Assembly: GCF_006345805.1 (NCBI RefSeq)
Contig: NW_021834378.1
Coordinates: forward strand, 1 to 58,488
DNA length: 58,488 nucleotides
Source: Octopus sinensis
Taxonomy: Eukaryota
Direction of reading: 5' to 3'
Shown: positions 6,795 to 41,022 of the stretch, one piece after another
How positions within the stretch are numbered: the stretch's first letter is position 1
How the letters are laid out: every line of letters begins with the position of its first letter
Notes under the pieces: model-generated
Told to the model about the DNA's origin: nothing
The model's input: only the letters and a program-made list of their open reading frames with translations
Databases searched by the model: none
Program-made: the position numbers and the translations under genes

Positions 6795-7425
6795 GGATGT
6801 TTTCGGTTTGAACGGCAGTTTTTTCTAGCGGTGTCATATGAAATTGTCACCCATAATTATGACCTTAGTATCGATCTATTGCATTTCTATCTGTTTTAGG
6901 GTTAGGGTTATGAGTGGGGGAAGGGTATCTTTTTTTCTTCACAAATGTAAATAAACCGAATCTGTTTCTTAAACGAGAGACATATTCATACGGCACAGAA
7001 TGTTGTTTACCTCAATAGGCGTCAGTGATTGGTTGAAATTGCAGAAATTGAAGAAAAAAAGCAACAACAAATATCTTACAAACTATAGAATTTTCTCATT
7101 AAAGCCAAGAGAAAAAGATGTTTTATAAACACATTCTACCAGTATACGAAGTTTTAAATTTTTTATTTACCTAGAAATTATGTTAAAAGCTGCCGTTCAA
7201 ACCGAAAAGATCCTGTTTTTTTACTGAATAGATGTCATTGATTGGTTGAAATTGCAGAAATTGAAGAAAAAAAAACAACAAATATCTTTTAAACTTTAGA
7301 ATTTTCTCAATAAAGCCAAGAGAAAAGGATGTCTTATAAACACATTCTACCAGTATACGAAGTTTAAAATTTTTTAGTTACCTAGAAATTATTTTTAAAA
7401 ACTGCCGTTCAAACCGAAAAGATCC
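6795..7425 (+). mobile_element. Small non-autonomous element of the same family (631 bp)
   Basis: TIRs GGATGTTTTCGGTTTGAACGGCAG and CTGCCGTTCAAACCGAAAAGATCC. Perfect 8-bp TSD AAATACCC (6787-6794, 7426-7433). Right end duplicated (internal TIR near 7190-7214). Confidence 0.85.
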
Positions 7426-10508: not shown

Positions 10509-10539
10509 AAAAATAAGAAATACGTGGAAATTTTGCCAG

Positions 10540-14445: not shown

Positions 14446-15164
14446 GGATCTTTTCGGTTTGAACGGCAGTTTTTAAAATAATTTCTAAGTAACTAAAAAA
14501 TTTTAAACTTCATATACTGGTAGAATGTGTTTATAAAACATCTTTTTCTCTTGGCTTTACTGAGAAAATTCTATAGTTTGTAACATATTTGTTGTTGTTT
14601 TTCTTCCATTTCTGCAATTTCAACCAATCACTGACGTCCATTGAGGTAAAAGCATTCTGTGCCGTATGAATATGTCCCTCATTTAAGAAACAGATCGGGT
14701 TTATTTACATTTGTGAAGAAAAAAAAAGGGATCTTTTCGGTTTGAACGGCAGTTTTTAACATAATTTCTAGGTAACTAAAAAATTTTAAACTTCGTATAC
14801 TGGTAGAATGTGTTTATAAAACATCTTTTTCTCTTGGCTGTATTGAGAAAATTCTATGGTTTGTAAGATATTTGTTGTTTTTTTTTCTTCAATTTCTGCA
14901 GTTTCAACCAATCACTGACGTCCATTGAGGTAAAAAAAAACACTCTGTACCGTATGAATATGTCCCTCGTTTAAGGAACAGATTCGGTTTATTTACATTT
15001 GTGAAGAAAAAAGATACCCTTTCCCCCACCCCTAACCCTAACCTTAACCCTAACTAACCCTAAATCAGATTGAAATGCAATAGATCGATACTAGGGTCAT
15101 AATTATGGGTGACAATTTCATATGACACCGCTAGAAAAAACTGCCGGTCAAACCGAAAAGATCC
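14446..15164 (-). mobile_element. Small non-autonomous element of the same family (719 bp)
   Basis: Same TIRs. TSD CCTAAAAA / CCTAAAAG (7 of 8). Terminal segment duplicated (second GGATCTTTTCGG near 14728). Confidence 0.8.
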
Positions 15165-15593: not shown

Positions 15594-15723
15594 CGAGCTG
15601 GCAGAAACGTTAGCGCCCCGGGCGAAATGCTTAGCGGTATTTCGTCTGCGTTACGTTGTGAGTTCAAATTCCGCCGAGGTCGATTTTGCCTTTCATCCTT
15701 TCGGGGTCAATTAAATAAGTACC
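15594..15723 (+). mobile_element. SINE family 2, 5' part, interrupted by the giant element; continues 41015-41485 as 3 tandem bodies
   Basis: Sequence continuity across the TSD; period of about 182 bp downstream. Confidence 0.85.
15716..15723 (+). repeat. Left target-site duplication TAAGTACC
   Basis: Directly precedes the GGATC terminus; identical to 41015-41022. Confidence 0.9.
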
Positions 15724-16140
15724 GGATCTTTTCCATTTGAAGGCTTGATTTCAACACAATTTCTAGTTAACTAAACTCTTTAAAACTTCGTATACTGGTA
15801 GAATATGTGAAAATAAAACATTTTTGGATCTTTTCCGTTTGAAGGCCAGATTTCAACACAATTTCTAGTTAACTAAACACTTTAAAACTTCGTATACTGG
15901 TAGAATGTGTCAAAATAAAAATTTTTTGGATCTTTTCCGTTTGAAGGCCAGATTTCAAAACAATTTCTAGTTAACTAAACTCTTTAAAGCTTTGTATACT
16001 GGTAGAAGGTGTCAAAATAAAACATTTTGGATCTTTTCCGTTTGAAGGCCAGATTTCAACACAATTTCTAGTTAACTAAACACTTTAACACTTTAAAACT
16101 TCGTATACTGGTAGAATGTGTCAAAATAAAACATTTTTTT
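15724..16140 (+). repeat. 102-bp tandem repeat x4 (outer terminus multimer)
   Basis: GGATC recurs at 15724, 15826, 15928 and 16029; mirrored at about 40598-41014. Confidence 0.85.
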
Positions 16141-16231
16141 TCTCTTGGCTTTCTTGAGAAAACTGTAATTTGTTTGTTTAACGTAGTTTAATTTTTCGAA
16201 TTTTAACCAATCCTATGCTCTCTTTTGAGCT

Positions 16232-16495
16232 AAAATCATTTGCTGCGTCTAAAACAGAGACAACATTCTGTAACTAACCCTAAACCTCCCCCATAACCCT
16301 AACCCAAACCCTAAGTTTATTTTTCTTAATTGTTAAATTAATTTAATAGTTACGCGTGTAAAAAAACTAAAGCAAAGGAATTACATTAATTTAACAATTA
16401 AGAAAAAAAATGTTAGGGTTATGGTTGGGGTTAGGGGGGAGGTTTAGGGTTAGTTACAGGATGTTGTCTCAGTTTTAGACGCAGCAAATGATTTT
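16232..16495. repeat. Hairpin core of E1 with degenerate TTAGGG/CCCTAA motifs (mirror copy 40250-40513)
   Basis: AAAATCATTTGCTGCGTCTAAAAC...TAACCCTAAACCTCCCCC pairs with GGGGGAGGTTTAGGGTTA...GTTTTAGACGCAGCAAATGATTTT. Confidence 0.8.
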
Positions 16496-16561
16496 TGTTG
16501 AATGGAGGTAATCGATTGGTTAAAATTGCCGAAATGCTCGGATTTTCAGACGAAATATCTT

Positions 16562-17886
16562 ACAAACTATAGAATTTTCTCAATAAAGCCAATGATGTTT
16601 TATAAACACATTCTACCAGTATACGAAGTTTAAAAAGGTTTAGTTACGTGGAAATTATTTTAAAAAGCTGCCGTTCAAACCGAAAAGATCCTAGAATTTT
16701 CTCAATAAAGCCAAGAGTAAAAGAGGTTTTATAAAAACATTCTACCAGTATACGAAGTTTAAAAGTGTTTAGTTACGTGGAAATTATTTTTAAAAACTGC
16801 CGTTCAAGCAGAAAAGATCCTAGAATTTTCTCAATAAAACCAAGAGAAAATGATGTTTTATAAACACATTCTACCAGTATACGAAGTTTAAAAGTGTTTA
16901 GTTACGTGCAAATTATTTTAAAAAACTGCCGTTCAAACAGAAAAGATCCTAGAATTTTCTCAATAAAACCAAGAGAAAATGATGTTTTATAAACACATTC
17001 TACCAGTATACGAAGTTTAAAATTGTTTAGTTACGTGGAAATTATTTTAAAAAACTGCCGTTCAAACAGTAAAGATCCTAGAATTTTCTCAATAAAACCA
17101 AGAGAAAATGATGTTTTATAAACACATTCTACCAGTATACGAAGTTTAAAAGTGTCTAGTTACGTGGAAATTATTTTTAAAAACTGCTTTTCAAACAGAA
17201 AAGATCCTAGAATTTTCTCAATAAGACCAAGAGAAAATGATGTTTTATAAACACATTCTACCAGTATACGAAGTTTAAAAGTGTCTAGTTACGTGGAAAT
17301 TATTTTTAAAAACTGCCTTTCAAACAGAAAAGTTCCTAGAATCTTCTCAATAAACCAAGAGAAAATGATGTTTTATAAACACATTCTACCAGTATACGAA
17401 GTTTAAAAGTCTTTAGTTACGTTGAAATTATTTTAAAAAACTGCCGTTCAAACAGAAAAGATTCTAGAATTTTCTCAATAAAACCAAGAGAAAATGATGT
17501 TTTATAAACACATTCTACCAGTATACAAAGTTTAAAAGTGTTTAGTTACGTGGACATTATTTTAAAAGACTGCCGTTCAAACTGATAATGTCCTAGAATT
17601 TTCTCAATAAAACTAAGAGAAAAGTTCCTAGAATCTTCTCAATAAAACCAAGAGAAAATGATGTTTTATAAACACATTCTACCAGTATACGAAGTTTAAA
17701 AGTGTCTAGTTACGTGGAAATTATTTTAAAAATCTGCCGTTCAAACAGAAAAGATCCTAGAATATTCTCAATAAAACCAAGAGAAAATGATGTTTTATAA
17801 ATACATTCTACCAGTATACGAAGTTTAAAATTGTTTAGTTACGTGGAAATTATTTTAAAAAACCGCCGTTCAAACAGAAAAGATCC
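16562..17886 (+). repeat. 129-bp tandem array, about 10 units
   Basis: GATCCTAGAA recurs at 16816 and 16945 (period 129). Each unit carries the terminal motif ACTGCCGTTCAAACAGAAAAGATCC. Confidence 0.9.
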
Positions 17887-18305
17887 AAATCATCTCCTGT
17901 TGTTCAGGACGAATGGCGGCCCGAATCGCAGGATGAACCTCAGTGCTTACCTCCATGGAGTGCCACAGGACTCATGGCAGCGGAGGATGAGTACTGCGAA
18001 AATCCGATAACAGACACTAAAATACAAGTAAAATAAACGAGGAGCAAATCAACTAATTCAGGTATGCTTCTTCTGAAACAGTGGAGGCGTCAGCATCATG
18101 ATCGTAAGATTGTGGTTTCGATTCCTGGACCGGGCGACGCGTTGTGTTCTTGAGCAAATCACTTAATTTCACGTTTCTCCAGTCCACCCAGCCGGCAAAA
18201 ATGAGTAACGCTGAGATGGACTGGCGTCCCATCCAGCTGGGGAACACATACGCCATTGAAACCGGAAAACTGGGCCCATGAGCCTGGCTAGGCTTTAAAA
18301 GGGTG

Positions 18306-19349
18306 TGTAGCAATAACCATTTTAGCCATTTTGAAATGTGGCCTGAATTGGCAATATGACGTAATGTCGTATTGCCGAAGAATTATCCTTTTCGTTCTTT
18401 TTTCCATTGGTTAATATAACTGCTCATATAAAGATTCTAAAAGTTTCGTAAATAATATTTGTCATGGATTTCGATTCTTTTTAGTCAAGTTGAGCAGTTA
18501 TAAAAACCCTGGATTTTGGGAAAAATTCCAGTGTTTGTTGGATGTCACTGACCTCCACGACACTCACTCTTTGAGACATCGGTAATTTTCATGCCATGTC
18601 TAGAGTTAATCACAAATCTATTTGCTAGAATTGAGAAATTAGTAATGAAATTATAGTCGTTCTTCTTCTTCACGACAAAGTTATCTTTCCTACTGTAAAT
18701 AATATAAAATGTTATATTTATTAATAAAACTAATTAAAGAAATGTTTCTCTTCACTTCAGTTTGCTATGAATATTAACGACATGTATGTTAAATATTTTC
18801 TTCGTGTCCTTTAAACCGCTAAAAGAAAACATAAATTAAGGATTACAGAAATGCATCCTTATCTATGCTCAGTTGAAAAACAAACGTGAAGAGAACATTT
18901 TCTTTAATTAGTTTTATTATATAAATATAACATTTTATATTATTTACAGTAGGAAAGATAACTTTGTCGCGAAGAAGAACGACTATAATTTCATTAAATA
19001 ATTTCTCAATTCTAGCTAATACATTAACCAACAAATCAAAATAGATTTGTGATTAACTCTAGACATGGCATGAAAATTCCCGATGTCTCAAAAGAGTGAG
19101 TGTCGTGGAGTTCAGTGACATCCAACAAACACTGAAATTTTTCCCAAAATCCAGGGTTTTTATAACTGCTCAACTTGACTAAAAAGAATCGAAATCCATG
19201 ACAATATTCTTTACGAAACTTTTAGAATCCTTATATGAGCAGTTATATTAACCAATGGGAAAAATGAAAATGATAATTTCGGCAATACGACATTACGTCA
19301 TATTGCCAATTCGGCCACATTTCAAAATGGCTAAAATGGTTTTGCTACA
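18306..19349. mobile_element. Foldback element with TGT..ACA ends and 4-bp TSD (GGTG), Ginger-like ends
   Basis: TGTAGCAATAACCATTTTAGCC...GGCTAAAATGGTTTTGCTACA, with GGTG on both sides and arms of about 450 bp. Confidence 0.7.
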
Positions 19350-19353
19350 GGTG

Positions 19354-19600
19354 CAATGAAGGCGCGTGGCTTAGTGTTTAGGGCGTCAGCATCATGATCG
19401 TAAAGGTTGTGGTTTCGATTCCTTGAACGGGCGACGCGTTGTATTCTTGAGCAAAACACTTCCTTTCCCGTTGGCTCCAGTCCACTCACTGGCAAAAATG
19501 AGTAACACTGCGATGGACTGGCGGCCCGTCCACTGGGTAACACATGCGCCATAGAAACCGAGAAAACGGGCCCATGAGCCTGGCTAGGCTTTAAAAAAAA
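19354..19600 (+). mobile_element. SINE family 3 (also 18075-18305, 15400-15590, and mirror copies 25530-25770, 26105-26330, 29620-29840, 30180-30430, 35110-35356, 36645-36870)
   Basis: GGCGCGTGGCTTAGTG A box, GGTTTCGATTCC B box, TTCTTGAGCAA..CAC core-like segment. Confidence 0.7.
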
Positions 19601-20361
19601 GGGCGTATTTGTTTATTTTTATTCTTCTCAAACACTGCGTTTAAATGACAGACTTGATTGATGACATTTAACAGATATCCAGCAACTGGCAATAAAACGA
19701 GAAAATTACCATTTCTGTGATCCAGAAAGTGGTGGCATTGCTGAAAGCAGACGCCAATAATGGGAACCATATCTGTAATTTCAGCCTAAAATTCGGCTAA
19801 TTGCGAAGCGAAAAAATTAACTCAAGTGTTAGCACAGATATTAACGCTTGTCATTATTGTTCTGGTCGGTGATTCGTCGCAGATATTCACCATCCTGAAT
19901 AGATCTCCTTACAAAAATTCTACTCATGTCATATGACAGAGGGAGTGGTTGAGGAACATGGCATGGCTGGGACCTAAACCAGTTTAGAAGAAACAAAAGC
20001 ATTCGAATGAGTCGCTCACCGATAATTGGCGACTGTCCTCACAAAGTCGCTTTCAGTCACGTCTTTCGGAGTTGGATTTGCCGCAATGTGCAATATCTTC
20101 TTGGTTGCCAGAGTAAAAGTCCACCTATGAGAACCGTTTATATATGACCAATCTACCATAGGTCACACTTCATCAGTAAATTTGATTAAATTAAGCTAGT
20201 TTATCATTTAACAACACAGAAACGATGCATCGTCTAAAAGATGAATTAGGGTAAATGTTTTTAAATTTTCACCTAATTTCTGAATTGATACTGCTTGCGG
20301 TTTGAGTTCTGGCTGCTCTCTCTAGTGGACGAATGGCCTGTTAAGGCCACTCCTAAATTGT

Positions 20362-20394
<33 letters not shown>

Positions 20395-20471
20395 TATATA
20401 TAGATGAGTGTATTTTACCTTGTTAACAATTAACACGGATAAATGAATGAATATATATATATATATATATA

Positions 20472-20521
<50 letters not shown>

Positions 20522-20797
20522 TGTATGTATATATATATATATAATGTATGTATATAATATATTATATGTATAGTATATTATATGTATGTATGTATGTATG
20601 TATATATCTATATATATATATTATAATATATATAATATATTATACACATATATATTTATCTTTTACTGTTTCAGTCACTAGACCACGGCCATACATGCAT
20701 ATATATATAGATATGTTGTATGTATGTATGTATGTATTATGCTTGTATATAATCATTCGATTAAAACATATACACATATACATGTATATATATACAC

Positions 20798-20836
<39 letters not shown>

Positions 20837-20837
20837 G

Positions 20838-20951
<114 letters not shown>

Positions 20952-21044
20952 CAACAAAATTTATTACAATCATGAACATAATTATAACATAATGGAGGTG
21001 CGGTGAAGCAATGTTGCTAAGCTCTAATTAGAAATATGTTCATA

Positions 21045-21625
21045 ATGGTAATATAAACTGAAGTTGTCTGTTTATGGCAGTTTGGTAGCCTTCAACTAAT
21101 TTTTTGGTGTATTTCCACCAGAAAAATGGTCACTTAAAGAGAATATCAATCTACATAATGCAAAAGTTTTATTTTCAAAAATTCCAATTCTAAAGGGTCG
21201 AAACAAACCCGAGCAATGCCGGGCGATACTGCTAGTATATATATAAAGCTGAAGTTGTTTGTGTAAGGCCGGTTTGATAGCCTTCAACTAACACTATCTC
21301 CTCCGAGACCCTGCGGCACAAGTTGACCAAAATTGAGAGTATGATAGAAGAAAGCTTGCTCTTCCTACCGTAGAAGAAAAAATTCAAATTGGACCCGTGT
21401 TAACACCAAAAATTATTTATATCAAAAAGGTGCTTTTTTCTATGAAAATCTCTATTTTTTTTTACGGTTTTTTTAACTGCTGTTCGCCATTTTTTGTGGT
21501 ATTTCAACCAGAAAATTTTCACTTAAGAGAATATCAAGCTACATAATGCAAAATTTTTATTTTCAAAACTTCCAATTCTAAAGAGTCGAAAAGAAAAGAA
21601 ACCCGAGCAATGCCGGGCGATACTT
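21045..21625 (+). mobile_element. Two tandem Helitron copies of a second subfamily (single copy in the mirror arm, about 33040-33425)
   Basis: The first ends AAACCCGAGCAATGCCGGGCGATACTGCTAG|T at 21235. The second starts ATATATAAAGCTGAAGTTG and loses CTAG at about 21625. Confidence 0.65.
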
Positions 21626-23286
21626 TTGAAATGTATTTCTTGCAACATCGTGTTAAAAAAATCATACAAAAATTCTCCTCTCTCTCGGTTCACTAAGCAG
21701 AAGCATTATTTAAGAGTTGCCTACGCAAGCAAAGTGATTCACGACATATATATATCTGCTGTCTTTTGTTATATTTGTTCGTTTCTGGGTTACTCGATAC
21801 AAAATGGAAAAGCTATTCAGAAGTGACATTTCAGATTTTCCAAAATGCATTTTTTTTTTTCACTGAAATAAAACCTGTCTACACTCCCTCCCTAGAAACA
21901 AATAAAGAAGATGATACGCTTGTATATAATTCATAAGAAAGACATTGTTGTGTACGGAATCAAACACTGCACCTAAAACCTGACCACCAATTATGATTCT
22001 GTGAACCATGGTTGCGTTGCAGCAATGCATGCACCTGGCAATGTAAAAAAATTCTTTTGAAATATATTTTTTGCACTATCCTTAAAAAACATCATACAAC
22101 AAACTCTCTTTCCTCGGGTTCACAAAGCAGAAACTTATTTAAGAGTTTTTTACAATAGGCAAAAGTGACTCACGACATATATAAGCTTCTCGAAATCCGG
22201 TTTCAGAATTGTCCAAATGCATTTTATTTTACACCGCGGATTTTAAATGTCTACACCTCCAACGAAACACATTACAAGTGGATCTTAAACAGATAGATAA
22301 TTCACAATAAAGACTAAATCGTGTCAAAATTTTACGCCAGCCGTTAAACTGCACTATGTTACTGTCCGTCGTTAAGAAATGCCAGCCATGGTGAACCCTA
22401 CTATCTTCAGATTCTATCCTTTCTGGAAAATGCAAAATACTGCATAACTAAAAGGATTTTTTATACATCAAAAACTCCAGCTGGGCCAAATTTCACTTTT
22501 CCTCTTTGTGAAGATGGAATAAGGCCAGCCATTTAGGAGAAAAAGTGTAGTCCGTACCAATGACTTGAGTCATTTTGTTGATTTATTATTGTATTGACAT
22601 TTAAAAGGTGAACATAAATAATCGGAAGAAATGCCAGTAAGCAGTTGGTCCGGCTTGCGAACCATTCTGTCACTTTGCCGCCTTTGGTTTCAACGATGGC
22701 ATAGGGTTATAATTTTAAGTAAAGGGAGTTAATTGATTACATCGACCCCCAGTGTTTAACTGGTACATATTTTAATCGACACAGCCTCTTTTCAACAGTG
22801 CTGATCAATTCTATGTCCCTGGGCTCTGACACAGTGACATCCTACCTCACGCAGAAATATTCCTCATGTCCCCATTTTCCGCAGTAGTAGCTTTAGAGTC
22901 TGTAAATAGAGAACGAATGGGTAAGAGAAAGCCTTGGAAATGAACGGTTCTCATTGGGACTTTTACTCTGGCAACCAAGAAGATATTGCACATTGTGGCA
23001 ATCCAACTCCGAAAAAGTATAGAGTATGTATGTATATATATATATATATATATATATAAATATAACATTTAGGAATGGCCTTAACAGGCCATTCGTCCAC
23101 CAGAAAGAGCAGCCAGAAACTCACACACCGCCAAGTAGTGCAATTCGGAAATAAGGGAAAATTTAAAACGTTTACCCTAATTCATCTTTTATACGAATGC
23201 ATCGTTTCAGTATTAATTGATAATATATATATATATATATATATAAATATATATATATATTATATAATATATATATATATATATAT

Positions 23287-23517
23287 TAAATTAGGATAAA
23301 ACCACTATTAGGCAAATCAAACAATGAAAAACATAAGCCAATACATAAAAGTAATTAATTTATATTATTTTAAATATATATCAAAAGTATTAAAAGTCTA
23401 ACTAAACTTTTAAAACTTTTGATATATATTTAAAATATATAAATTAATTATTTATGTATTGGCTTCTTATGTTTTTCATAGTTTGATTTGCCTAATAGTG
23501 GTTTTTATCTTAATTTA
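23287..23517. repeat. AT-rich hairpin with arms of about 105 bp (mirror 31332-31567; half copy 2860-2915)
   Basis: ATAAAACCACTATTAGGCAAATCAAAC pairs with GTTTGATTTGCCTAATAGTGGTTTTTAT. Confidence 0.7.
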
Positions 23518-23831
23518 ATATAATATAATATTTTACTATAAAATTGGATTTAATCCTAAATCCTGATTTTTCCCTGTAAGTTTGATTTTTCCCTAATATT
23601 TATCATATTATAATATATATATATATATATATAATATATATATATATATATTATATAACAATAAGATTCTTTGCAACATAAGGGTCAAGCAACTTGTTGC
23701 AAAGACCCTTATTGTTATAATTATATAAACTTTTACCGAATATGGTCCTTTCCATATCGGAGTGCTACTAGGTGAAATTTGTTAATTTTATTAAATTAAT
23801 TTATTTCACCCTTTATCTGTATATATAATAT

Positions 23832-24940
23832 AGCTTGGGCAAAGTTCAGAGAGCTCTTATACCTCTGCTGGTGACAAAGGCCTCTCGCACAGAGTGAAGG
23901 CAGACTGTATGATGCGTGTGTACGAACAGCCATGCTACATGGCAGTGAAACATGGGCCGTGACTGCTGAGGATATGCGTAAACTCGCTAGAAATGAAGCC
24001 AGTATGCTCCGATGATGTGTAATGCCGTTACTCACACTCGGCAGAGTGTAAGTACCTTGAGAGAAAGCTGGACCTAAGAAGCATCAGTTGTGGTGTGGCA
24101 AGAGAGACGTTTGCGCTGGTATGGTCCATGTGGCGAGAATGGATGAAGATAGTTGTGTGAAAAAGTGCCACACCCTAGCGGTTGAGGGAACCTGTGGAAG
24201 AGGCAGACCCAGGAAAACCTGGGACGAGGTGGTGAAGCACGACCTTCGAACTTTAGGTCTCACTGAGGAAATGACTAGAGACCGAGACCTCTGAAGTGTG
24301 CTGTGCGCGAGAAGACCCGGCAGGACATGAGTCCATAACCCGTTGCCTTCTACATGGGATGGAGCCCAGCCTACGTATGCATACCTTCCCTTCTTGGACA
24401 CAAAACTCTATTTGTGAAGACGTGATGAGGCAAGTGAGGATCAGAATCGAAATCGATCAATGGAAATTGCTGATTGCTACCAGTGCGGCCTGTGGCATGT
24501 CAAAACTCTGCTTGTGAAGACCCGTTGAGGCAAGTGACGATCAGAATCGAATCGATCAATGGAAATCGATCAATGGAAATTGCAGATGTGTTACCAGTGC
24601 CGGTGGCATGTAAGAGAACTTTCCGTTTCGCGACCGTTGCCAGCACCGCCCCGTTTCGTGTCCGTTGGCAGCCTCGCCTGGCCCTCGTGCCGGTGGCACT
24701 AAAAGCAACCATCCGTCGTCGTGGCCGTTTGCCAGCTCTGTCTGGCACCAGTGCGGGTGCACGTAAAAAGCACCCACTACACTCACGGAGTGGTTGGCGT
24801 TAGGAAAGGCATCCCAGCCGTAGAAACACTGCCAGATTTGACTGGGCCTGATGAAGCCTTCTGGCTTCACAGACCCCAGTAGAACCGTCCAACCCATGCT
24901 AGCATGGAAAACGGACGCTAAACGATGTTGATGATGATGA
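23832..24940 (+). mobile_element. 5'-truncated RTE-type LINE (end of ORF2, 3' UTR, (ATG)n tail)
   Basis: Frameshifted RLYDACVRTAMLHGSETWAVTAEDMRKLARNEASMLR ... HVARMDEDSCVKKC..VEGTCGRGRPRKTW; LHGSETW and GRPRKTW are RTE hallmarks. Confidence 0.8.
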
Positions 24941-25775
24941 TATATATATATATATATAATATATATATATTATATATTATATAAACGTTTCTCATAGGGG
25001 ACTTTTACTCTGGCACCAAGAAGATATTGCACATTGCGGCAATCCAACTCCCGAAAGAACGTGACTGAAAGCGACTTTTGTGAGGACAGTCGCCAATTAT
25101 CGGTGAGCGACTCATTCGAATGCTTTTGTTCTCTTCTAAACTGGTTAGGTCCCAGCCATGCCATGTTCCTCAACCACTCCCTCTGTCATATGACATGAGT
25201 AGAATTTTTTGTAAGGAGATCTATTCAGGATGGTGAATATCTGCGAATCACCGACCAGAACAATAATGACAAGCGTTAATATCGTGCTACACAACTTGAG
25301 TTAAATTTTTTCGCTTCGCAATTAGCCGAATTTAGGCTGAAATTTACAGATATGGTTCCCATTATTGGCGTCTGCTTTCAGCAATGCCACCACTTTCTGG
25401 ATCACAGAAATGGTAATTTTCTCGTTTTATTGCCAGTTGCTGGATATCTGTTAATATGTCATCAATCAAGTCTTCATTTAAACGCAGTGTTTGAGAAGAA
25501 TAACAATAATAAATATGCGCCCTTTTTTTTTAAAGCCTAGCCAGGCTCAGGAGCCCTTTTCCCTCGGTTTCTATGCGCATGTGTTACCCAGCTGGACGGG
25601 CCCGCCAGTCCATCGCAGTGTTACTCATTTTTGCCAGCTGAGTGGACTGGAGCACGTGAAAGGAATGTTTTGCTCAAGAATACAACGCGTCGCCCGTTCC
25701 AGGAATCGAAACCACAACCTTTACGATCATGATGCTGACGCCATAAACACTAAGCCACGCGCCTTCATTTGCACC

Positions 25776-26100
25776 TGTAGCAATAACCATTTTAGCCATT
25801 TAAATGTGGCGTGAATTGGCAATATGACGTAATGTCTTTGCCGAAGATTATCATTTTCATTTTTCCCATTGGGTATATAACTGCTCATATAAAGATTCTA
25901 AAAGTTTCGTAAAGAATATTTGTCATGGATTTCGATTCTTTTTAGTCAAATTTCTTTACGAAACTTTTAGAATCTTTATATGAGCAGTTATATTAACCAA
26001 TGGAAAAAAAACGAAAAGGATAATTCTTCGGCAATACGACATTACGTCATATTGCCAATTCACGCCACATTTCAAAATGGCTAAAATGGTTATTGCTACA
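25776..26100. mobile_element. Same foldback element, centre-deleted state (325 bp)
   Basis: Same termini and CACC flanks; only about 160 bp of each arm remain. Confidence 0.7.
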
Positions 26101-26503
26101 CACCCTTTTAAGCCTAGCCAGGCTCATGAGCCCAGTTTTCCCGTTCAATGGCGTATGTGTTCCCCAGCTGGATGGGACGCCAGTCCATCTAAGCGTTACT
26201 CATTTTTGCCGGCTGGTGGACTGGAGAAACGTGAAATTAAGTGATTTGCTCAAGAACACAACGCGTCGCCCGGTCCAGGAATCGAAACCCACAATCTTAC
26301 GATCATGATGCTGACGCCTCCACTGTTTCAGAAGAAGGCATACCTGAATTAGTTGATTCTCCTCGTTTGCTCCTGTCTGTTATCGGATTTTTCGCAGTAC
26401 TCATCCTCCGCTGCCATGAGTCCTGTGGCACTCCATGGAGGTAAGCACTGAGGTTCATCTTGCGATTCGGTCCGCCATTCGTCCTGAACACAGGAGATGA
26501 TTT

Positions 26504-29437
26504 GATCTTTTCCTTTTGAACGGCAGTTTTCAACACAATTTCTAGTTAACTAAACACTTTTCAACTTCGTTACTGGTAGAATGTGTTTATAAAACATCAT
26601 TTTCTCTTGGTTTTATTGAGAAAATTCTAGAATCATTTCTGTTTGAACGGCATTTTTTTAAAATAATTTCCACGTAACTAAACACTTTTAAACTTCGTAT
26701 ACTGGTAGAATGTATTTATAAAACATCATTTTCTCTTGGTTTTATTGAGAAAATTCTAGGATCTTTTCTGTTTGAAAGGCAGTTTTTAAAAATAATTTCC
26801 ACGTAACTAAACACTTTTAAACTTCGTATACTGGTAGAATGTTTTATAAAAATCATTTTCTCTTGGTTTATTGAGAAGATTCTAGGACTTTTCTGTTTGA
26901 AAGGCAGTTTTTAAAAATAATTTCCACGTAACTAAAAACACTTTTACTTCGTATACTGGTAGAATGTGTTTTAAAACATCATTTTCTCTTGGTTTTATTG
27001 AGAAAATTCTAGAATCTTTTTCTTTTGAACGGCAGTTTTTTAAAATAATTTCCACGTAACTAAACAAACTTTTAAAACTTCGTATACTGGTATGAATGTA
27101 TTTATAAAACATCATTTTCTCTGTTTTATTGAGAAAATTCTAGGATCTTTTCTGTTTGAAAGGCCGTTTTTAAAATAATTTCCACGTAACTAAACACTTT
27201 TAAACTTCGTATACTGGTAGAATGTGATTATAAAACAAAAAATCATTTTCTCTTTGTTTTATTGAGTAGATTCTAGGAACTTTTCTGTTTGAAAGGCAGT
27301 TTTTAAAAATAATTTCCACGTAACTAAACACTTTTCAACTTCGTATACTGGTAGAATGTGTTATAAACATCATTTTCTCTTGGTTTTATTGAGAAAATTC
27401 TAGAATCTTTTCTGTTTTGAACGCAAGTTTTTTAAAATAATTTCCACGTAACTAAACCTTTTAAACTTCGTTACTGGTAGAATGTATTTATAAAACATCA
27501 TTTTCTCTTGGTTTTATTGAGAAAATTCTAGGATCATTTCTGTTTGAAAGGCAGTTTTAAAAATAATTTCCACGTAACTAAACACTTTTAAACTTCGTAT
27601 ACAGGTAGAATGTGTTTAAAAACATCATTTTCTCTTGGTTTTATTGAGAAGATTCTAGGAACTTTTCTGTTTGAAAGGCAGTTTTTAAAAATAATTTCCA
27701 CGTAACTAAACACTTTAAACTTCGTATACTGGTAGAATGTGTTTATAAAACATCATTTTCTCTTGGTTTTATTGAGAAAATTCTAGAATCTTTTCTGTTT
27801 GAAAGGCAGTTTTTTAAAATAATTTCCACGTAACTAAACACTTTAAACTTCGTATACTGGTAGAATGTGTTATAAAACATCATTTTCTCTGGTTTTATTG
27901 AGAAAATTCTAGGATCTTTTCTGTTTGAACGGCAGTTTTTTAAAATAATTTCCACGTAACTAAAAACTTTTAGTTACGTGGAAATATTTTTAAAAAACTG
28001 CCGTTCAAACAGAAAAGATCCTAGAATTTTCTCAATAAAACAAGAGAAAATGATGTTTTATAAACACATTCTACCAGTATACGAAGTTTAAAAGTGTTTA
28101 GTTACGTGGAAATTATTTTAAAAAACTGCCTTTCAAACAGAAAAGATTCTAGAATTTTCTCAATAAAACCAAGAGAAAATGATGTTTTATAAACACATTC
28201 TACCAGTATACGAAGTTTAAAAGTGTTTAGTTACGTGGAAATTATTTTTAAAAACTGCCTTTCAAACAGAAAAGTTCCTAGAATCTTCTCAATAAAACCA
28301 AGAGAAAATGATGTTTTATAAACACATTCTACCTGTATACGAAGTTTAAAAGTGTTTAGTTACGTGGAAATTATTTTTAAAAACTGCCTTTCAAACAGAA
28401 ATGATCCTAGAATTTTCTCAATAAAACCAAGAGAAAATGATGTTTTATAAATACATTCTACCAGTATACGAAGTTTAAAAGTGTTTAGTTACGTGGAAAT
28501 TATTTTAAAAAACTGCCGTTCAAACAGAAAAGATTCTAGAATTTTCTCATAAAACCAAGAGAAAATGATGTTTTATAAACACATTCTACCAGTATACGAA
28601 GTTGAAAAGTGTTAGTTACGTGGAAATTATTTTTAAAAAACTGCCTTTCAAACAGAAAAGTTCCTAGAATCTACTCAATAAAACCAAGAGAAAATGATGT
28701 TTTATAATCACATTCTACCAGTATACGAAGTTTAAAAGTGTTTAGTTACGTGGAAATTATTTTTAAAAACTGCCTTTCAAACAGAAAAGATCCTAGAATT
28801 TTCTCAATAAAACCAAGAGAAAATGATGTTTTATAAATACATTCTACCAGTATACGAAGTTTAAAAGTGTTTAGTTACGTGGAAATTATTTTAAAAAACT
28901 GCCGTTCAAACAGAAAAGATTCTAGAATTTTCTCAATAAAACCAAGAGAAAATGATGTTTTATAAACACATTCTACCAGTATACGAAGTTTAAAAGTGTT
29001 TAGTTACGTGGAAATTATTTTTAAAAACTGCCTTTCAAACAGAAAAGTTCCTAGAATCTTCTCAATAAAACCAAGAGAAAATGATGTTTTATAAACACAT
29101 TCTACCAGTATACGAAGTTTAAAAGTGTTTAGTTACGTGGAAATTATTTTTAAAAACTGCCTTTCAAACAGAAAAGATCCTAGAATTTTCTCAATAAAAC
29201 CAAGAGAAAATGATGTTTTATAAATACATTCTACCAGTATACGAAGTTTAAAAGTGTTTAGTTACGTGGAAATTATTTTAAAAAACTGCCGTTCAAACAG
29301 AAATGATTCTAGAATTTTCTCAATAAAACCAAGAGAAAATGATGTTTTATAAACACATTCTACCAGTATACGAAGTTTAAAAGTGTTTAGTTAACTAGAA
29401 ATTGTGTTGAAATCTGGCCTTCAAACGGAAAAGATCC
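26504..29437. repeat. Head-to-head 129-bp arrays (about 11 + 11 units) at the centre of the inner palindrome
   Basis: Orientation flips at GTAACTAAAA-AC-TTTTAGTTAC (loop 27966-27967). Confidence 0.9.
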
Positions 29438-29842
29438 AAATCATCTCCTGTTGTTCAGGACTAATGGCGGCTCGAATCGCAAGATGAACCTCAGTGCTTA
29501 CCTCCATGGAGTGCCACAGGACTCATGGCAGCGGAGGATGAGTACTGCGAAAATCCGATAACAGACAGGAGCAAACGAGGAGCAAATCAACTAATTCAGG
29601 TATGCTTCTTCTGAACAGTGGAGGCGTCAGCATCATGATCGTAAGATTGTGGTTTCGATTCCTGGACCGGGCGACGCGTTGTGTTCTTGAGCAAATCACT
29701 TCATTTCACGTTTCTCCAGTCCACCCAGCCGGCAAAAATGAGTAACGCTGAGATGGACTGGCGTCCCATCCAGCTGGGGAACACATACGCCATTGAAACC
29801 GGAAAACTGGGCTCATGAGCCTGGCTAGGCTTTAAAAGGGTG

Positions 29843-30174
29843 TGTAGCAATAACCATTTTAGCCATTTTGAAATGTGGCGTGAATTGGCAATATGACGTA
29901 ATGTCGTATTGCCGAAGAATTATCCTTTTCGTTTTTTTTCCATTGGTTAATATAACTGCTCATATAAAGATTCTAAAAGTTTCGTAAAGAATATTTGACT
30001 AAAAAGAATCGAAATCCATGACAAATATTCTTTACGAAACTTTTAGAATCCTTATATGAGAAGTTATATTAACCAATGGGAAAAATGAAAATGATAATTC
30101 TTCGGCAATACGACATTACGTCATATTGCCAATTCACGCCACATTTCAAAATGGCTAAAATGGTTATTGCTACA
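29843..30174. mobile_element. Same foldback element, centre-deleted state (332 bp)
   Basis: Mirror of 25776-26100, with GGTG flanks. Confidence 0.7.
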
Positions 30175-30965
30175 GGTGCAAATGAAGGCGCGTGGCTTAG
30201 TGTTTAGGGCGTCAGCATCATGATCGTAAAGGTTGTGGTTTCGATTCCTGGAACGGGCGACGCGTTGTATTCTTGAGCAAAACACTTCCTTTCACGTTGC
30301 TCCAGTCCACTCAGCTGGCAAAAATGAGTAACACTGCGATGGACTGGCGGCCCGTCCAGCTGGGTAACACATGCGCCATAGAAACCGAGAAAACGGGCCC
30401 ATGAGCCTGGCTAGGCTTTAAAAAAAAAAGGGCGTATTTATTTATTTTTATTCTTCTCAAACACTGCGTTTAAATGACAGACTTGATTGATGACATATTA
30501 ACAGATATCCAGCAACTGGCAATAAAAGGAGAAAATTACCATTTCTGTGATCCAGAAAGTGGTGGCATTGCTGAAAGCAGACGCCAATAATGGGAACCAT
30601 ATCTGTAAATTTCAGCCTAAAATTCGGCTAATTGCGAAGCGAAAAAATTTAACTCAAGTGTTAGCACAGATATTAACGCTTGTCATTATTGTTCTGGTCG
30701 GTGATTCGCAGATATTCACCATCCTGAATAGATCTCCTTACAAAAAATTCTACTCATGTCATATGACAGAGGGAGTGGTTGAGGAAAATGGCATGGCTGG
30801 GACCTAAACCAGTTTAGAAGAAACAAAAGCATTCGAATGAGTCGCTCACCGATAATTGGCGACTGTCCTCACAAAAGTCGCTTTCAGTCACGTCTTTCGG
30901 AGTTGGATTGCCGCAATGTGCAATATCTTCTTGGTTGCCAGAGTAAAAGTCCACCTATGAGAACC

Positions 30966-31055
<90 letters not shown>

Positions 31056-31574
31056 AGATAAAGGGTGAAATATAATTAATTTAATAAAATTAACTAATTT
31101 CACCTAGTAGCACTTCGATATGGAAAAGGACCATATTCGGTAAAAGTTTATATAATTATAACAATAAGGGTCTTTGCAACAAGTTGCTTGACCCTTATTG
31201 TTGCAAAGAATCTTATTGTTATATATATATATATATATATATGATAAAATATTAGGGAATAAATCCAAACTTACAGGGAAAAATCAGATTTAGGATTAAA
31301 TCCAATTTTATAGTAAAATATTATATTATATTAAATTAGAGATAAAACCACTATTAGGCAAATCAAACAATGAAAAACATAAGAAGCCAATACATAAAAT
31401 TAATTAATTTATATTATTTAAAATATATATCAAAAGTTTTAAAAGTTTAGTTAGACTTTTAATACTTTTGATATATATTTAAAATAATATAAATTAATTA
31501 CTTTTATGTATTGGCTTATGTTTTTCATTGTTTGATTTGCCTAATAGTGGTTTTATCTCTAATTTAATATAATA

Positions 31575-31620
<46 letters not shown>

Positions 31621-33522
31621 TATATATACATACTCTATACTTTTTCGGAGTTGGATTGCCACAATGTGCAATATCTTCTTGGTTGCCAGAGTAAAAGTCC
31701 ACCAATGAGAACCGTTCATTTCCAAGGCTTTCTCTTCCCATTCGTTCTCTATTTACAGACTCTAAAGCTACTACTGCGGAAAATGGGGACATTGAGGAAT
31801 ATTTCTGCGTGAGGTAGGATGTCACTGTGTCAGAGCCCAGGGACATAGAATTGATCAGCACTGTTGAAAAGGAGGCTGTGTCGATAAAATATGTACCAGT
31901 TAAACACTGGGGTCGATGTAATCAATTAACTCCCTTTACTTAAAATTATAACCCTATGCCATCATTTGAAACCAAAGGCGGCAAAGTGACAGAATGGTTC
32001 GCAAGCCGGACAAACTGCTTACTGGCATTTCTTCCGATTATTTATGTTCACCCTTTAAATGTCAATACAATAATAAATCAACAAAATGACTCAAAGTCAT
32101 TGGTACGGACTACACTTTTCTCCTAAACTGGCTGGCCTTATTCCATCTTCACAAAGAGGAAAAGTGAAATTTGGCCCAGCTGGAGTGTTTTTGTATGTAT
32201 AAAAAATCCTTTTAGTTATGCAGTATTTTGCATTTTCCCAGAAAGGATAGAATCTGAGGATAGTAGGGTCACCATGGCTGGCATTTCTTAACGACGGACA
32301 GTAACATAGTGGCAGTTTAACGGCTGGCGTAAAATTTTGACACGATTTAGTCTTTATTATGAATTATCTGTCTGTTTAATATCCTCTTTGTAATGTGTTT
32401 CGATGGAGGTGTAGACATTTTAAAATCTCGGTGTAAATAAAATGCATTTTGGAAATTCTGAAACCGGACCTTCGAGGAGCTTATATATATGTCGTGAGTC
32501 ACTTTTGCCTATAGTAAACAACTCTTAAATAAGTTTCTGCTTTGTGAACCGAGGAAAGAGAGTTTTTTGTATGATTGTTTTTTTAAGGATTTTGCAAAAA
32601 ATATATTTCAAAAGCATTTTTTTTACATTGCCAGGTGCATGCATTGCTGCAACGCAACCATGGTTCACAGAATCATAATTGGTGGTCAGGTTTTAGGTGC
32701 AGTTGTATTGATTCCGTACACAACAATGTCTTTCTTATGAATTATATACAAGCGTATCCTCTTCTTTATTTGTTTCTAAGGGAGTGTAGACAGGTTTTAT
32801 TTCAGTGAAAAAAAAAATGCATTTTGGAAAATCTGAAATGTCACTACTGAAACGCATTTCCTTTTTGTATCGAGTAACCCAGAAACGAACAAATATAACA
32901 AAAGACAGCAGATATATATACGTCGTGGATCACTTTTGCTTGCGTAGGCAACTCTTAAATAATGCTTCTGCTTAGTGAACCGAGAGAGGAGAATTTTTGT
33001 ATGATTTTTTTAACGATGTTGCAAGAAATACATTTCAAAAGTATCGCCCGGCATTGCTCGGGTTTCTTTTCTTTTCGACTCTTTAGAATTGGAATTTTTG
33101 AAAATAAATATTTTGCATTATGTAGCTTGATATTCTCTTTAAGTGAACATTTTTCTGGTTGAAATACACCAAAAAATGGCGACACAGCAGTTAAAAAACC
33201 GTAAAAAATAGGGATTTTCATAGAAAAAAGCACCTTTTTGATATAAATAATTTTTGGTGTTAACACGGTCCAATTTGAATTTTTTCTTCTACGGAAGGAA
33301 GAGCAAGCCTTCTTCTATCATACTCTTAATTTTGGTCAACTTGCGCAGCAGGGTCCCGGAGGAGATAGTGTTAGTTGAAGGCTACCAAACCTGCCATACA
33401 CAGACAACTTCAGTTTTATATTACCATTATGAACATATTTCTAATTAGAGCTTAGCAACATTGCTTCACCGCACCTCAATTATGTTTATAATTATGTTCA
33501 TGATTGTAATAAATTTTGTATG

Positions 33523-33580
<58 letters not shown>

Positions 33581-33599
33581 GATATATATATATATATAT

Positions 33600-33644
<45 letters not shown>

Positions 33645-33712
33645 ATATGTGTATATATATATATATAGATATATATATATATATATAATATATATTATAT
33701 ATATATATATAT

Positions 33713-33744
<32 letters not shown>

Positions 33745-33964
33745 TATGTGTATATATATACATGTATATGTGTATATGTTTTAATCGAATGATTCAATAT
33801 ACAAGCATATATACATACATACATACATACATATCTATATATATATGCATGTATGGCCGTGGTCTAGTGACTGAAACAAGTAAAAGATAAATATATATGT
33901 GTATATATATATACGTATATATATATATATATATATATAGATATATATATATATACATACATAC

Positions 33965-34063
<99 letters not shown>

Positions 34064-34093
34064 TATATTATATATATATATATATATACACAC

Positions 34094-34165
<72 letters not shown>

Positions 34166-34236
34166 TACATACATATATATATATATATAATATATATTAT
34201 ATATATATATAATATATATACATATATATATATTAT

Positions 34237-34267
<31 letters not shown>

Positions 34268-34312
34268 TCATTCATTTATCCGTGTTAATTGTTAACAAGG
34301 TAAAATACACTC

Positions 34313-34343
<31 letters not shown>

Positions 34344-41014: not shown

Positions 41015-41022
41015 TAAGTACC
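41015..41022 (+). repeat. Right target-site duplication TAAGTACC
   Basis: Directly follows the GATCC terminus; the SINE body resumes (AGTTACGCACTGGGGTCG). Confidence 0.9.

What the first reader, a model, noticed from the sequence alone, without database searches (positions are those of the whole stretch)
16562..17886. Satellite arrays made of the transposon's own terminus, with intermediates visible
Every 129-bp unit contains the full terminal motif (ACTGCCGTTCAAACAGAAAAGATCC), and every 102-bp unit the other terminus. Copy number runs from 2 (duplicated ends in the small elements at 7190-7425 and 14446-14750) to about 10, 11+11 and 24. This looks like a series showing a transposon end turning into a satellite. 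Inference: dozens of potential transposase-binding and cleavage sites per element could enable alternative-end transposition, or could titrate transposase as a decoy.
Basis: partly seen in the sequence, partly recalled or inferred. Interest (0 to 1): 0.7.

Follow-up and report, generated by a model that had tools for sequence, protein, structure and literature searches.

The report
Transposon-end satellite inside giant palindrome
In an octopus genome, the end of a miniature DNA transposon has been copied head-to-tail into 129-bp arrays, but the four arrays here are mirror-image parts of one 25-kb mobile element rather than separate evolutionary stages, making this a new example of a known route from transposon to satellite DNA.

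Summary
[quoted passage not shown] The array consensus is 93% identical to the last 129 bp of the MITE's right end.

The interpretation needs correcting in three places:
- **The 102-bp unit.** It is a diverged inverted copy (about 80%) of the same right end, not the MITE's other end.
- **The "series" 2, 10, 11+11, 24.** It is not a series. The 102-, 129-, 211- and 283-bp repeats are four independent duplications, each with one breakpoint exactly at the terminal nucleotide.
- **The four 129-bp arrays.** They are not separate elements. All lie in one 25.3-kb nested palindrome (15724-41014). It has 102-bp arrays at both tips and a perfect TSD (TAAGTACC) inside a SINE whose empty site can be reconstructed. 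All four arrays abut the same flank.

No transposase is present. The 5'-GG TIR plus 8-bp TSD point to Merlin rather than hAT.

Nothing here supports use as alternative ends or as a decoy. The terminal motif is the most variable part of the unit.

The closest known analogues are foldback elements such as Tetris and Galileo. This is a new member of a known kind.

The parts
15716..15723 (.). Left target-site duplication TAAGTACC of the 25.3-kb block, inside a SINE
   Evidence: Read from the sequence. The flanks, joined with one TSD copy, align without a gap to intact SINE copies.
15724..16138 (-). B array: 102-bp unit x4. The outermost unit supplies the left terminus of the block (GGATCTTTTCC...).
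   Evidence: TRF. Unit alignment gives the B consensus 80% identity to A and 82% to the MITE right end.
16139..16590 (.). Spacer. An imperfect palindrome (arms 16193-16347 and 16380-16534, 82% complementary) containing degenerate TTAGGG repeats. It is homologous to the interior of the small MITE's right half.
   Evidence: and (16194-16527 matches its own mirror copy at 80%).
16562..17886 (+). A1 array, the finding itself: 129-bp unit x10, each ending in the TIR. The last unit ends ...AAAAGATCC at 17886.
17887..26503 (.). P: 8.6 kb of non-coding carried DNA (SINE fragments, microsatellites). Its own ends are inverted repeats: F+G at 17887-18461 plus 19175-20138, against 26503-24984.
   Evidence: Self-BLAST. 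No ORF above 121 aa, and the longest ORFs are microsatellite. There are 134 and 151 stop codons in the two frames tried, one on each strand.
26504..27966 (-). A2 array: 11.5 units. The terminal unit is an A/B chimera. It has many 1-bp indels.
27952..27981 (.). Centre of the palindrome: CCACGTAACTAAAA-AC-TTTTAGTTACGTGG, with the axis between 27966 and 27967. It falls inside a unit at a short natural inverted repeat (TAAA-CAC-TTTA).
   Evidence: Sequence. A 160-nt hairpin folds at -80.2 kcal/mol, z = -22.9.
27967..29437 (+). A3 array: 11.4 units, mirror of A2, with a 3-unit higher-order repeat. The terminal unit is an A/B chimera.
   Evidence: identity 0.969 at lag 3 against 0.947-0.949 at lags 1 and 2.
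29438..37059 (.). P': inverted copy of P. It lacks the 1.16-kb segment 23820-24983.
37060..40154 (-). A4 array: 24 units, mirror of A1 with about 14 extra units.
40155..40606. Spacer', mirror of 16139-16590 (97.1% identity).
40607..41014 (+). B' array: 102-bp unit x4. It supplies the right terminus of the block (...GGAAAAGATCC).
41015..41022 (.). Right target-site duplication TAAGTACC, followed by the rest of the interrupted SINE.
6795..7425 (+). Small MITE M1. The TIRs match at 28/29 positions. The last 211 bp, including the terminus, are duplicated in tandem. Perfect 8-bp TSD AAATACCC at 6787-6794 and 7426-7433.
14446..15164 (-). Small MITE M2, in the opposite orientation. The last 283 bp, including the terminus, are duplicated in tandem. 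TSD CCTAAAAA / CCTAAAAG (7 of 8).
57793..57859 (+). Truncated left-end fragment of the same family. Internal MITE sequence sits directly 5' of the terminus.

Best explanation
The array at 16562-17886 is a module of the long inverted terminal region of a non-autonomous, foldback-type DNA transposon of an octopus. It is probably mobilised by a Merlin-superfamily transposase.

**Shown**
- A roughly 420-bp MITE family exists with 29-nt TIRs starting GG and with 8-bp TSDs.
- The 129-bp (A) and 102-bp (B) units are the last 129 and 102 bp of that MITE's right end, repeated head-to-tail with no filler.
- A 2.2-kb element E (B x4, palindromic spacer, A x10) is a right-end/right-end foldback of the MITE. 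Its arms have diverged by about 20%.
- Two E copies in mirror orientation close off a 25.3-kb two-level palindrome carrying about 8.6 kb of non-coding DNA twice.
- That whole block sits in a SINE between perfect 8-bp TSDs. It, or a simpler E-P-E' precursor, was therefore inserted by transposition using the outer B-type termini.

**Inferred**
- Each array began as a dimer, formed when a cleaved or inserting terminus was joined to an internal site of a copy of the same element. Routes include self or double insertion followed by deletion between the direct repeats.
- This would explain why four independent duplications (102, 129, 211, 283 bp) all have the terminal nucleotide as a breakpoint.
- The dimers then grew and shrank by unequal exchange. 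The evidence is the 3-unit higher-order repeat, 10 against 24 units in mirror arms, and a unit deleted between two AGAAAA repeats.
- The palindromes arose by two successive inverted duplications. The last was a fold-back (hairpin or template-switch) event at a 4-bp inverted repeat inside a unit.

No present function is demonstrated. The likely consequences are structural (hairpin or cruciform-prone DNA) and possibly small-RNA production if the locus is transcribed.
For: - **Repeat structure and motif counts:**
- **Unit homology:** A is 120/129 identical to the MITE right end, and B is 82/103 identical to A.
- **Junction positions:** 100, 128, 213 and 287 bp from the terminus, with the alignment starting at base 1 (base 4 for M2) after the internal terminus.
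- **TIRs and TSDs of M1 and M2:**
- **Palindrome map:**
- **Same flank at all four array ends:**
- **Empty-site reconstruction across TAAGTACC:**
- **Centre of symmetry:**
- **Higher-order repeat:**
- **Divergence hierarchy in substitutions:**
  - B arrays 4.4%
  - spacer 2.9%
  - first two A units 2-5%
  - inner F pairs (J1 or J4 against J2 or J3) 1.6-1.8%
  - mirror pairs J1/J4 0.5% and J2/J3 1.1%
  - three A1 units identical to A4 units
- **No coding capacity:**
- **Same family in Octopus sinensis:**
- **Merlin hallmarks** (5'-GG TIR, 8-9 bp TSD) and 191 Merlin sequences in O. bimaculoides: PMC8101967.
- **Precedents:** Tetris, PMC4079207, and transposon dimers growing into arrays, PMC5932611.
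Against: - Only one window, plus 21 kb of O. sinensis, could be examined. Family copy number, the existence of other arrays and the autonomous partner are all unknown.
- The terminal unit at J2 and J3 is B-type while at J1 and J4 it is A-type. This needs an extra conversion step.
- The self-insertion origin of the dimers leaves no unique scar, so it is not proven.
- The divergence gradient could also come from arm-to-arm gene conversion.
- The left inner arm is rich in 1-bp indels, so some divergence figures may include consensus errors.
- The superfamily call rests on two structural hallmarks and three or four TSDs.
Confidence: 0.6

Rival explanations
1. The arrays are kept, or were selected, as batteries of transposase-binding and cleavage sites. 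They would let the element transpose from alternative internal ends, or soak up transposase as a decoy.
For: - About half of the units keep the exact terminal 8 nt, and 12 keep the exact 25-mer.
- Galileo's TIR repeats are reported to carry secondary transposase-binding sites, and the Tetris authors suggest a similar benefit (PMC4079207).
- The B-type outer termini were evidently used for transposition.
Against: - No copy in the window ends at an internal unit with its own TSD. All four A-array ends share one flank.
- The most variable columns of the unit lie in the terminal motif, while an internal 22-mer is nearly invariant.
- The array consensus has CAG where every TSD-flanked copy has CCG.
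- Length differences between the mirror arms look like neutral unequal exchange.
Confidence: 0.15
2. The 25.3-kb block is a composite insertion made in one step by alternative transposition, as described for maize Ac/Ds. Two termini on sister chromatids insert together into an unreplicated site. The element and its donor flank are re-replicated from both ends, and the two stalled forks fuse head-to-head.
For: - Composite insertions are described as bordered by transposon copies and carrying donor-flank DNA.
- They contain inverted transposon fragments and have perfect 8-bp TSDs (bioRxiv 10.1101/2020.01.07.897926).
- The block has all four features.
Against: - The centre is symmetric to within 2 nt. 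Fusion of two independently aborted forks would rarely give that.
- The outer parts (B arrays, spacer) are more diverged than the inner parts, which fits at least two events better than one.
- The mechanism is documented for hAT elements, not for Merlin.
Confidence: 0.15
3. The satellite came first. A pre-existing 129-bp host satellite supplied the right end of the MITE, and the arrays here are just that satellite.
For: Satellite-to-MITE capture is discussed in the literature on transposons and satellites (reviews listed). Direction cannot be proven from one window.
Against: - Four different periods share the terminal nucleotide as a breakpoint.
- Every array ends exactly on the terminus.
- The last 29 nt are an inverted repeat with the left end of TSD-flanked copies.
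- All 129- and 102-bp units in the window lie inside one TSD-bounded element.
Confidence: 0.05
4. The central palindrome is an assembly artefact, for example a fold-back chimeric long read, and the true locus is a simpler E-P-E'.
For: - The centre is perfectly symmetric.
- The left inner arm carries 30-40 one-base gaps per 1.5 kb relative to its mirror, which suggests a poorly polished stretch.
Against: - The flanks are not mirrored. They continue the SINE across a TSD.
- The arms differ by 14 array units, a 1.16-kb segment and 0.5-4% substitutions.
Confidence: 0.05

Closest known systems
Tetris foldback transposon of Drosophila virilis (TIR-220 repeats, satellite-like arrays), PMC4079207
   Same: - Non-autonomous, with long TIRs containing tandem repeats derived from the TIR end.
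- A non-coding middle domain and 8-9 bp TSDs.
- A related short MITE (DAIBAM).
- Repeat number varies between copies, which the authors attribute to unequal crossing-over.
   Different: - TIR-220 shares only a 37-bp stretch (about 80%) with the terminal domain. Here each unit contains the whole 29-nt TIR and ends on the terminal base.
- Here two array types of different period sit in one TIR.
- Here the element is a two-level palindrome of 25 kb.
- Whether kilobase arrays exist outside the element, as they do for Tetris, is unknown here.
Galileo (P superfamily) and Drosophila FB elements
   Same: Long, internally repetitive TIRs, great structural variability, and tandem repeats in the TIRs that may carry extra transposase-binding sites (as cited in PMC4079207; see also PMC3573991, listed).
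   Different: - The TIR sequence is different and the superfamily is probably different.
- No transposase is present here.
- The terminus-exact unit phase seen here is not a described feature of those repeats.
Transposon tandem dimers growing into arrays (McGurk and Barbash 2018, PMC5932611)
   Same: Transposition itself creates head-to-tail junctions at transposon ends. These can expand, as with hobo at about 16 copies. This is the mechanism proposed here for the dimer stage.
   Different: - There, whole elements are repeated. Here only the last 102-283 bp are repeated, which implies insertion into, or joining to, an internal site of the same element followed by deletion.
- The event was not observed directly here.
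Ac/Ds composite insertions from alternative transposition (Wang et al., bioRxiv 10.1101/2020.01.07.897926)
   Same: Bounded by an 8-bp TSD, bordered by transposon ends, carrying donor-flank DNA and inverted transposon fragments. Such loci produce hairpin RNA and siRNAs.
   Different: - That system is hAT.
- Fusion points there are not expected to be symmetric.
- Here the divergence pattern suggests at least two events.
- No expression data are available here.
Merlin superfamily MITEs (Feschotte 2004, as summarised in PMC8101967)
   Same: TIRs of 24-462 bp starting 5'-GG, and 8- or 9-bp TSDs. Merlin is unusually abundant in Octopus bimaculoides, with 191 sequences.
   Different: No DDE_Tnp_IS1595 transposase has been linked to these TIRs, so membership is not established.

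Membership tests
MITE / non-autonomous TIR (class II) transposon | Terminal inverted repeats | tested here: met
   The left and right ends of M1 and M2 match at 28/29 nt (GGATCTTTTCGGTTTGAACGGCAGTTTTT).
MITE / non-autonomous TIR (class II) transposon | Target-site duplication of fixed length | tested here: met
   8 bp in every case: AAATACCC (perfect), TAAGTACC (perfect, with the empty site reconstructed) and CCTAAAAA/CCTAAAAG (7 of 8)..
MITE / non-autonomous TIR (class II) transposon | No coding capacity | tested here: met
   No ORF of 190 aa or more in the window. The long ORFs are microsatellite translations. No Pfam hit for the five ORFs scanned, of which only one (24556-24897) lies inside the block..
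Merlin superfamily | 8- or 9-bp TSD and TIR beginning 5'-GG (PMC8101967) | tested here: met
   All termini read GGATC..., and all TSDs are 8 bp.
Merlin superfamily | Mobilised by a DDE_Tnp_IS1595 transposase whose element carries matching TIRs | not testable with these tools
   There is no autonomous copy in the window, and no searchable octopus genome was available.
hAT superfamily | 8-bp TSD | tested here: met
hAT superfamily | TIR beginning YARNG and target consensus nTnnnnAn (from general knowledge of the family) | tested here: not met
   The termini begin GGATC. None of the three TSDs has both T at position 2 and A at position 7. The sample is small.
Foldback-type transposons (FB, Tetris, Galileo-like architecture) | Long TIRs made largely of tandem repeats, around a variable non-coding middle domain, with a TSD | tested here: met
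   One search gives the map, another the arrays and the TSD. This is an architectural class, not a phylogenetic one.
Satellite DNA | Head-to-tail arrays of a monomer of about 100-200 bp reaching kilobase length, with homogenisation or higher-order structure | tested here: met
   Arrays of 1.3-3.1 kb, 94% matches, and a 3-unit higher-order repeat.
Satellite DNA | High genomic abundance, or long blocks independent of the parent element | not testable with these tools
   The invariant core 22-mer gave no hit in the metagenome or prokaryote collections. The 21 kb of O. sinensis examined held one 100-bp MITE and no array.

The most novel reading that the evidence does not exclude
The transposase itself makes these satellites. 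Repeated joining of a cleaved terminus to internal sites of sister or nearby copies (self-insertion or one-ended events) would generate terminus-exact dimers, which then expand. The resulting multi-terminus foldback modules would remain active ends that can capture and move 10-25 kb of host DNA as palindromic composites. The window would then be a natural record of transposase-driven satellite birth coupled to palindrome amplification, in a Merlin-type element. Neither alternative transposition nor satellite formation is described for Merlin in the papers read here.
Probability: 0.2. Interest if true: 0.65.

Novelty: new member of a known kind. Interest (0 to 1): 0.42.

Why it matters
How dispersed transposons turn into tandem satellites is still argued mostly from end states. 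This locus offers two useful things.

First, there are four independent tandem duplications of one transposon end, all with the terminal nucleotide as a breakpoint. That points to the transposition machinery, rather than random slippage, as the maker of the first dimer.

Second, it is a clean, TSD-bounded example of array-bearing foldback modules enclosing and duplicating about 8.6 kb of ordinary DNA. Such modules could be a source of large palindromes, inversions and fragile sites in the very repeat-rich cephalopod genomes.

The locus also shows that nearby arrays of different length are not necessarily evolutionary intermediates. Here they are mirror copies of one another.

Tried and rejected
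- **Public collection scans.** I scanned the JGI metagenome and GTDB genome collections for the invariant core 22-mer, hoping for further copies. Both gave 0 hits, as expected for an animal repeat.
- **Rfam scan of the window.** Nothing found.
- **Search for a transposase.**
  - No ORF of 190 aa or more in the window.
  - No Pfam domain in the five ORFs scanned.
- **Sampling more octopus DNA through proteins.**
  - One ORF led to Octopus sinensis LOC115225585 and 21 kb of its genome. That stretch held one 100-bp derivative of the MITE and no array.
  - A SINE-derived ORF found nothing, and the window ORF itself is not on record.
  - ORFs inside the arrays are under 40 aa, so a protein route to other arrays is closed.
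- **P as an ordinary transposon inserted between two termini.** Rejected, because no TSD can be read at its borders.
- **E (15724-17886) or the central pair (26504-29437) as independent insertions.** Rejected, because their flanks do not form TSDs (TAAGTACC against AAATCATC, and GATGATTT against AAATCATC).
- **The 102-bp array at 6060-6462.** It has the same period but is unrelated.

Full report
**1. What is at 16562-17886**

The window is animal DNA, full of microsatellites, SINEs and TTAGGG-like tracts. An ORF at 10435-11001 is 73% identical to an uncharacterised protein of Octopus sinensis, so the source is an octopus or a close relative.

Tandem Repeats Finder reports a 129-bp array at 16591-17623 (8.0 copies, 94% matches). 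It continues at 17618-17886 (2.1 copies). One unit carries an extra 35 bp, which is itself a unit deleted between two AGAAAA repeats.

The 25-mer ACTGCCGTTCAAACAGAAAAGATCC occurs 60 times in the window at 3 mismatches or fewer, against none in shuffles.
- 26504-27972 (- strand)
- 27969-29437 (+ strand)
- 37060-40154 (- strand)
- 102-bp arrays at 15724-16138 and 40607-41012

**2. The unit is the end of a MITE**

Two small elements, M1 (6795-7425) and M2 (14446-15164), have 29-nt terminal inverted repeats (GGATCTTTTCGGTTTGAACGGCAGTTTTT, 28/29 between the ends). Their 8-bp target-site duplications are AAATACCC (perfect) and CCTAAAAA/CCTAAAAG.

The consensus of 55 full 129-bp units is 120/129 identical to the last 129 bp of the MITE's right end.

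The 102-bp unit is not the MITE's other end. It aligns over its whole length to the same right end (82%) and to the 129-bp unit (80%). The MITE's true left end shares only the 29-nt TIR.

The 2.2-kb stretch 15724-17886 (which I call E) is therefore a foldback of two right halves:
- 102-bp array x4 pointing left
- a 452-bp spacer that is itself an 82% palindrome and resembles the MITE interior
- 129-bp array x10 pointing right

A 100-bp deletion derivative of the same family, with an exact TIR, lies in the O. sinensis genome.

**3. The 'series' is four independent events**

I aligned the 50 nt that follow an internal terminus to the MITE for each repeat type. The four types restart at 100, 128, 213 and 287 bp from the right terminus, with no filler bases.

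The two-copy elements (periods 211 and 283 bp) are therefore not precursors of the 129-bp array. They are separate duplications.

All four have one breakpoint exactly at the terminal nucleotide. Random slippage or unequal exchange would rarely do that four times. Joining a transposase-defined end to an internal site of another copy of the element would do it every time. Self-insertion or double insertion, followed by deletion between the direct repeats, gives L…x…R|x…R.

This is inference. The precedent is the finding that transposition regularly makes transposon dimers that can expand (PMC5932611).

Later growth by unequal exchange is supported by three observations:
- a 3-unit higher-order repeat in the central arrays (identity 0.969 at lag 3 against 0.947-0.949 at lags 1 and 2)
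- 10 against 24 units in mirror arms
- a unit-by-unit matrix in which A1 units 5, 6 and 9 are identical to A4 units 15, 16 and 22, while A4 has blocks of extra units

**4. The four 129-bp arrays belong to one element**

Self-BLAST with arrays and microsatellites masked shows that 15724-41014 is one palindrome:

| Left arm | Right arm (inverted) | Identity |
|---|---|---|
| 16139-16590 | 40606-40155 | 97.1% |
| 17887-18755 | 37059-36189 | 98.3% |
| 18764-20353 | 35953-34352 | 97.2% |
| 21241-23024 | 33421-31633 | 94.9% |
| 24984-26503 | 30968-29438 | 96.4% |

The '11+11' pair is simply its centre. The axis lies between 27966 and 27967: CCACGTAACTAAAA-AC-TTTTAGTTACGTGG. The 160-nt hairpin around it folds at -80 kcal/mol, z = -22.9.

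Each arm contains a second inverted repeat: 17887-18461 plus 19175-20138 against 26503-24984.

All four arrays end on the same junction...AAAAGATCC|AAATCATCTCCTGTTGTTCAGG. They are copies of one junction, not four insertions.

The outer ends of the block are different. The left flank ends ...AAATAAGTACC and the right flank starts TAAGTACCAGTTACG... Joining the flanks with one copy of TAAGTACC gives a sequence that aligns without a gap across the junction to uninterrupted copies of the same SINE, including the next one 350 bp away.

The block, or a simpler precursor with the same two outer 102-bp termini, is therefore a bona fide insertion with a perfect 8-bp TSD.

It carries no gene. The longest ORFs are microsatellite, and the two frames tried (one on each strand) have 134 and 151 stops in 2,872 codons.

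**5. How the palindrome probably formed**

Substitution divergence is not uniform:

| Comparison | Divergence |
|---|---|
| 102-bp arrays | 4.4% |
| Spacer | 2.9% |
| First two 129-bp units next to the spacer | 2-5% |
| Inner inverted repeat (J1 or J4 against J2 or J3) | 1.6-1.8% |
| Mirror pair J1/J4 | 0.5% |
| Mirror pair J2/J3 | 1.1% |

This ordering fits an older composite E-P-E' that later underwent inverted duplications. The last would be a fold-back at the short natural inverted repeat TAAA-CAC-TTTA in a unit. If the copying strand returned to the original template through the homologous array of E', the original right flank and TSD would be preserved.

Arm-to-arm gene conversion could produce a similar gradient, so this remains a model.

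A one-step 'composite insertion' by alternative transposition with re-replication, as shown for Ac/Ds, has the same outward features: transposon-bordered, donor flank included, inverted fragments, 8-bp TSD. It is a serious rival. The 2-nt-exact symmetry and the stepped divergence argue against it.

The terminal unit at J2 and J3 is an A/B chimera, while at J1 and J4 it is pure A-type. Any model has to add a conversion event to explain this.

**6. Which transposase**

None is present in the window. The structural hallmarks are an 8-bp TSD and TIRs starting 5'-GG. These are the ones given for Merlin (TIRs of 24-462 bp with terminal GG, TSDs of 8-9 bp). Merlin is unusually abundant in Octopus bimaculoides, with 191 sequences (PMC8101967).

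hAT also makes 8-bp TSDs. From general knowledge, however, its TIRs start YARNG and its targets fit nTnnnnAn, and neither is seen here. I rate Merlin more likely than hAT, but membership is untested.

**7.

About half of the units keep the exact terminal 8 nt, and 12 keep the exact 25-mer. Many potential sites therefore exist. The evidence otherwise points away from maintained function:
- The most variable columns of the unit are in the terminal motif (minor variants at 40%, 25% and 20%).
- An internal 22-mer, CATTCTACCAGTATACGAAGTT, is nearly invariant across the A, B and MITE copies.
- The array consensus has CAG where every TSD-flanked copy has CCG.
- No element in the window ends at an internal unit with its own TSD.

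The ends that were demonstrably used are the outermost B-type termini. Use as alternative ends, or as a decoy, remains possible but unsupported.

**8. Comparison with known systems, and novelty**

The architecture matches foldback-type elements. Tetris has long TIRs with 220-bp repeats partly derived from the TIR end, a non-coding middle, 8-9 bp TSDs and a related MITE. Galileo and FB have internally repetitive TIRs.

Differences here:
- Each unit contains the whole TIR and ends on the terminal base.
- Two array types of different period sit in one TIR.
- There are four independent terminus-exact duplications.
- There is a 25-kb two-level palindrome.

No description of this family in octopus turned up in the paper library.

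I file it as a new member of a known kind. It is a good natural example, of moderate interest. Its main value is the mechanistic clue of the terminus-exact breakpoints.

**9. Caveats**

- The evidence comes from one window plus 21 kb of a related genome.
- There is no read-level validation.
- The left inner arm (about 21-28 kb) has many 1-bp gaps relative to its mirror, which suggests local consensus errors.
- A fold-back chimeric-read artefact is unlikely, because the flanks are not mirrored and the arms differ by 14 units and a 1.16-kb segment. It should still be excluded with raw reads.

Noticed in passing
window 43735-48590: A separate 156-bp satellite of 31 units at 95% identity. Every unit carries TACAGTGGCTTGCAAAAGTCTACAACCCC on the + strand (31 hits). 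From memory this resembles the TA + CAGTGCCTTGCA... inverted repeats of Tc1-like transposons. It may be a second, unrelated 'transposon-end satellite' 2.7 kb from the first.
   Followed up: partly
window 6887-6905, 15020-15065, 16268-16315, 16413-16450, 40290-40330, 40430-40470, 57703-57744: Every copy of the MITE family carries a short degenerate telomere-type tract, (TTAGGG)3-6 or its complement, in its interior. The family therefore scatters interstitial telomere-like repeats.
   Followed up: no
window 21200-28000 against 28000-33400: The left inner arm of the palindrome has 30-40 single-base gaps per 1.5 kb relative to its mirror copy, many more than the outer segments have. This looks like a poorly polished stretch of a long-read assembly.
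   Followed up: partly
window 23820-24983: A 1.16-kb GC-rich segment (about 50% GC) is present only in the left arm. Related copies lie at 4352-4651 and 53061-53368. It is probably a later insertion of another repeat family, or a deletion in the right arm.
   Followed up: no
window 6060-6462: A tandem array of the same 102-bp period (4 copies) but unrelated sequence. It is inverted-homologous to 1895-2309. It could easily be confused with the 102-bp arrays of the element.
   Followed up: partly
window 41015-41487 and 12488-12842: The SINE that was hit by the insertion is itself arranged in short tandem runs (182 bp x2.6 and 184 bp x1.9).
   Followed up: no
L001 5377-5477 (Octopus sinensis CM016886.1, 4502328-4523173 reversed): A roughly 100-bp deletion derivative of the same MITE. 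One end is an exact TIR and the other is decayed, with no recognisable TSD. It shows that the family is shared with O. sinensis.
   Followed up: partly
window 57793-57859: A truncated left-end fragment of the MITE. Internal MITE sequence sits directly upstream of the terminus, which may be a fifth 'internal|terminus' junction, this time at the left end.
   Followed up: partly
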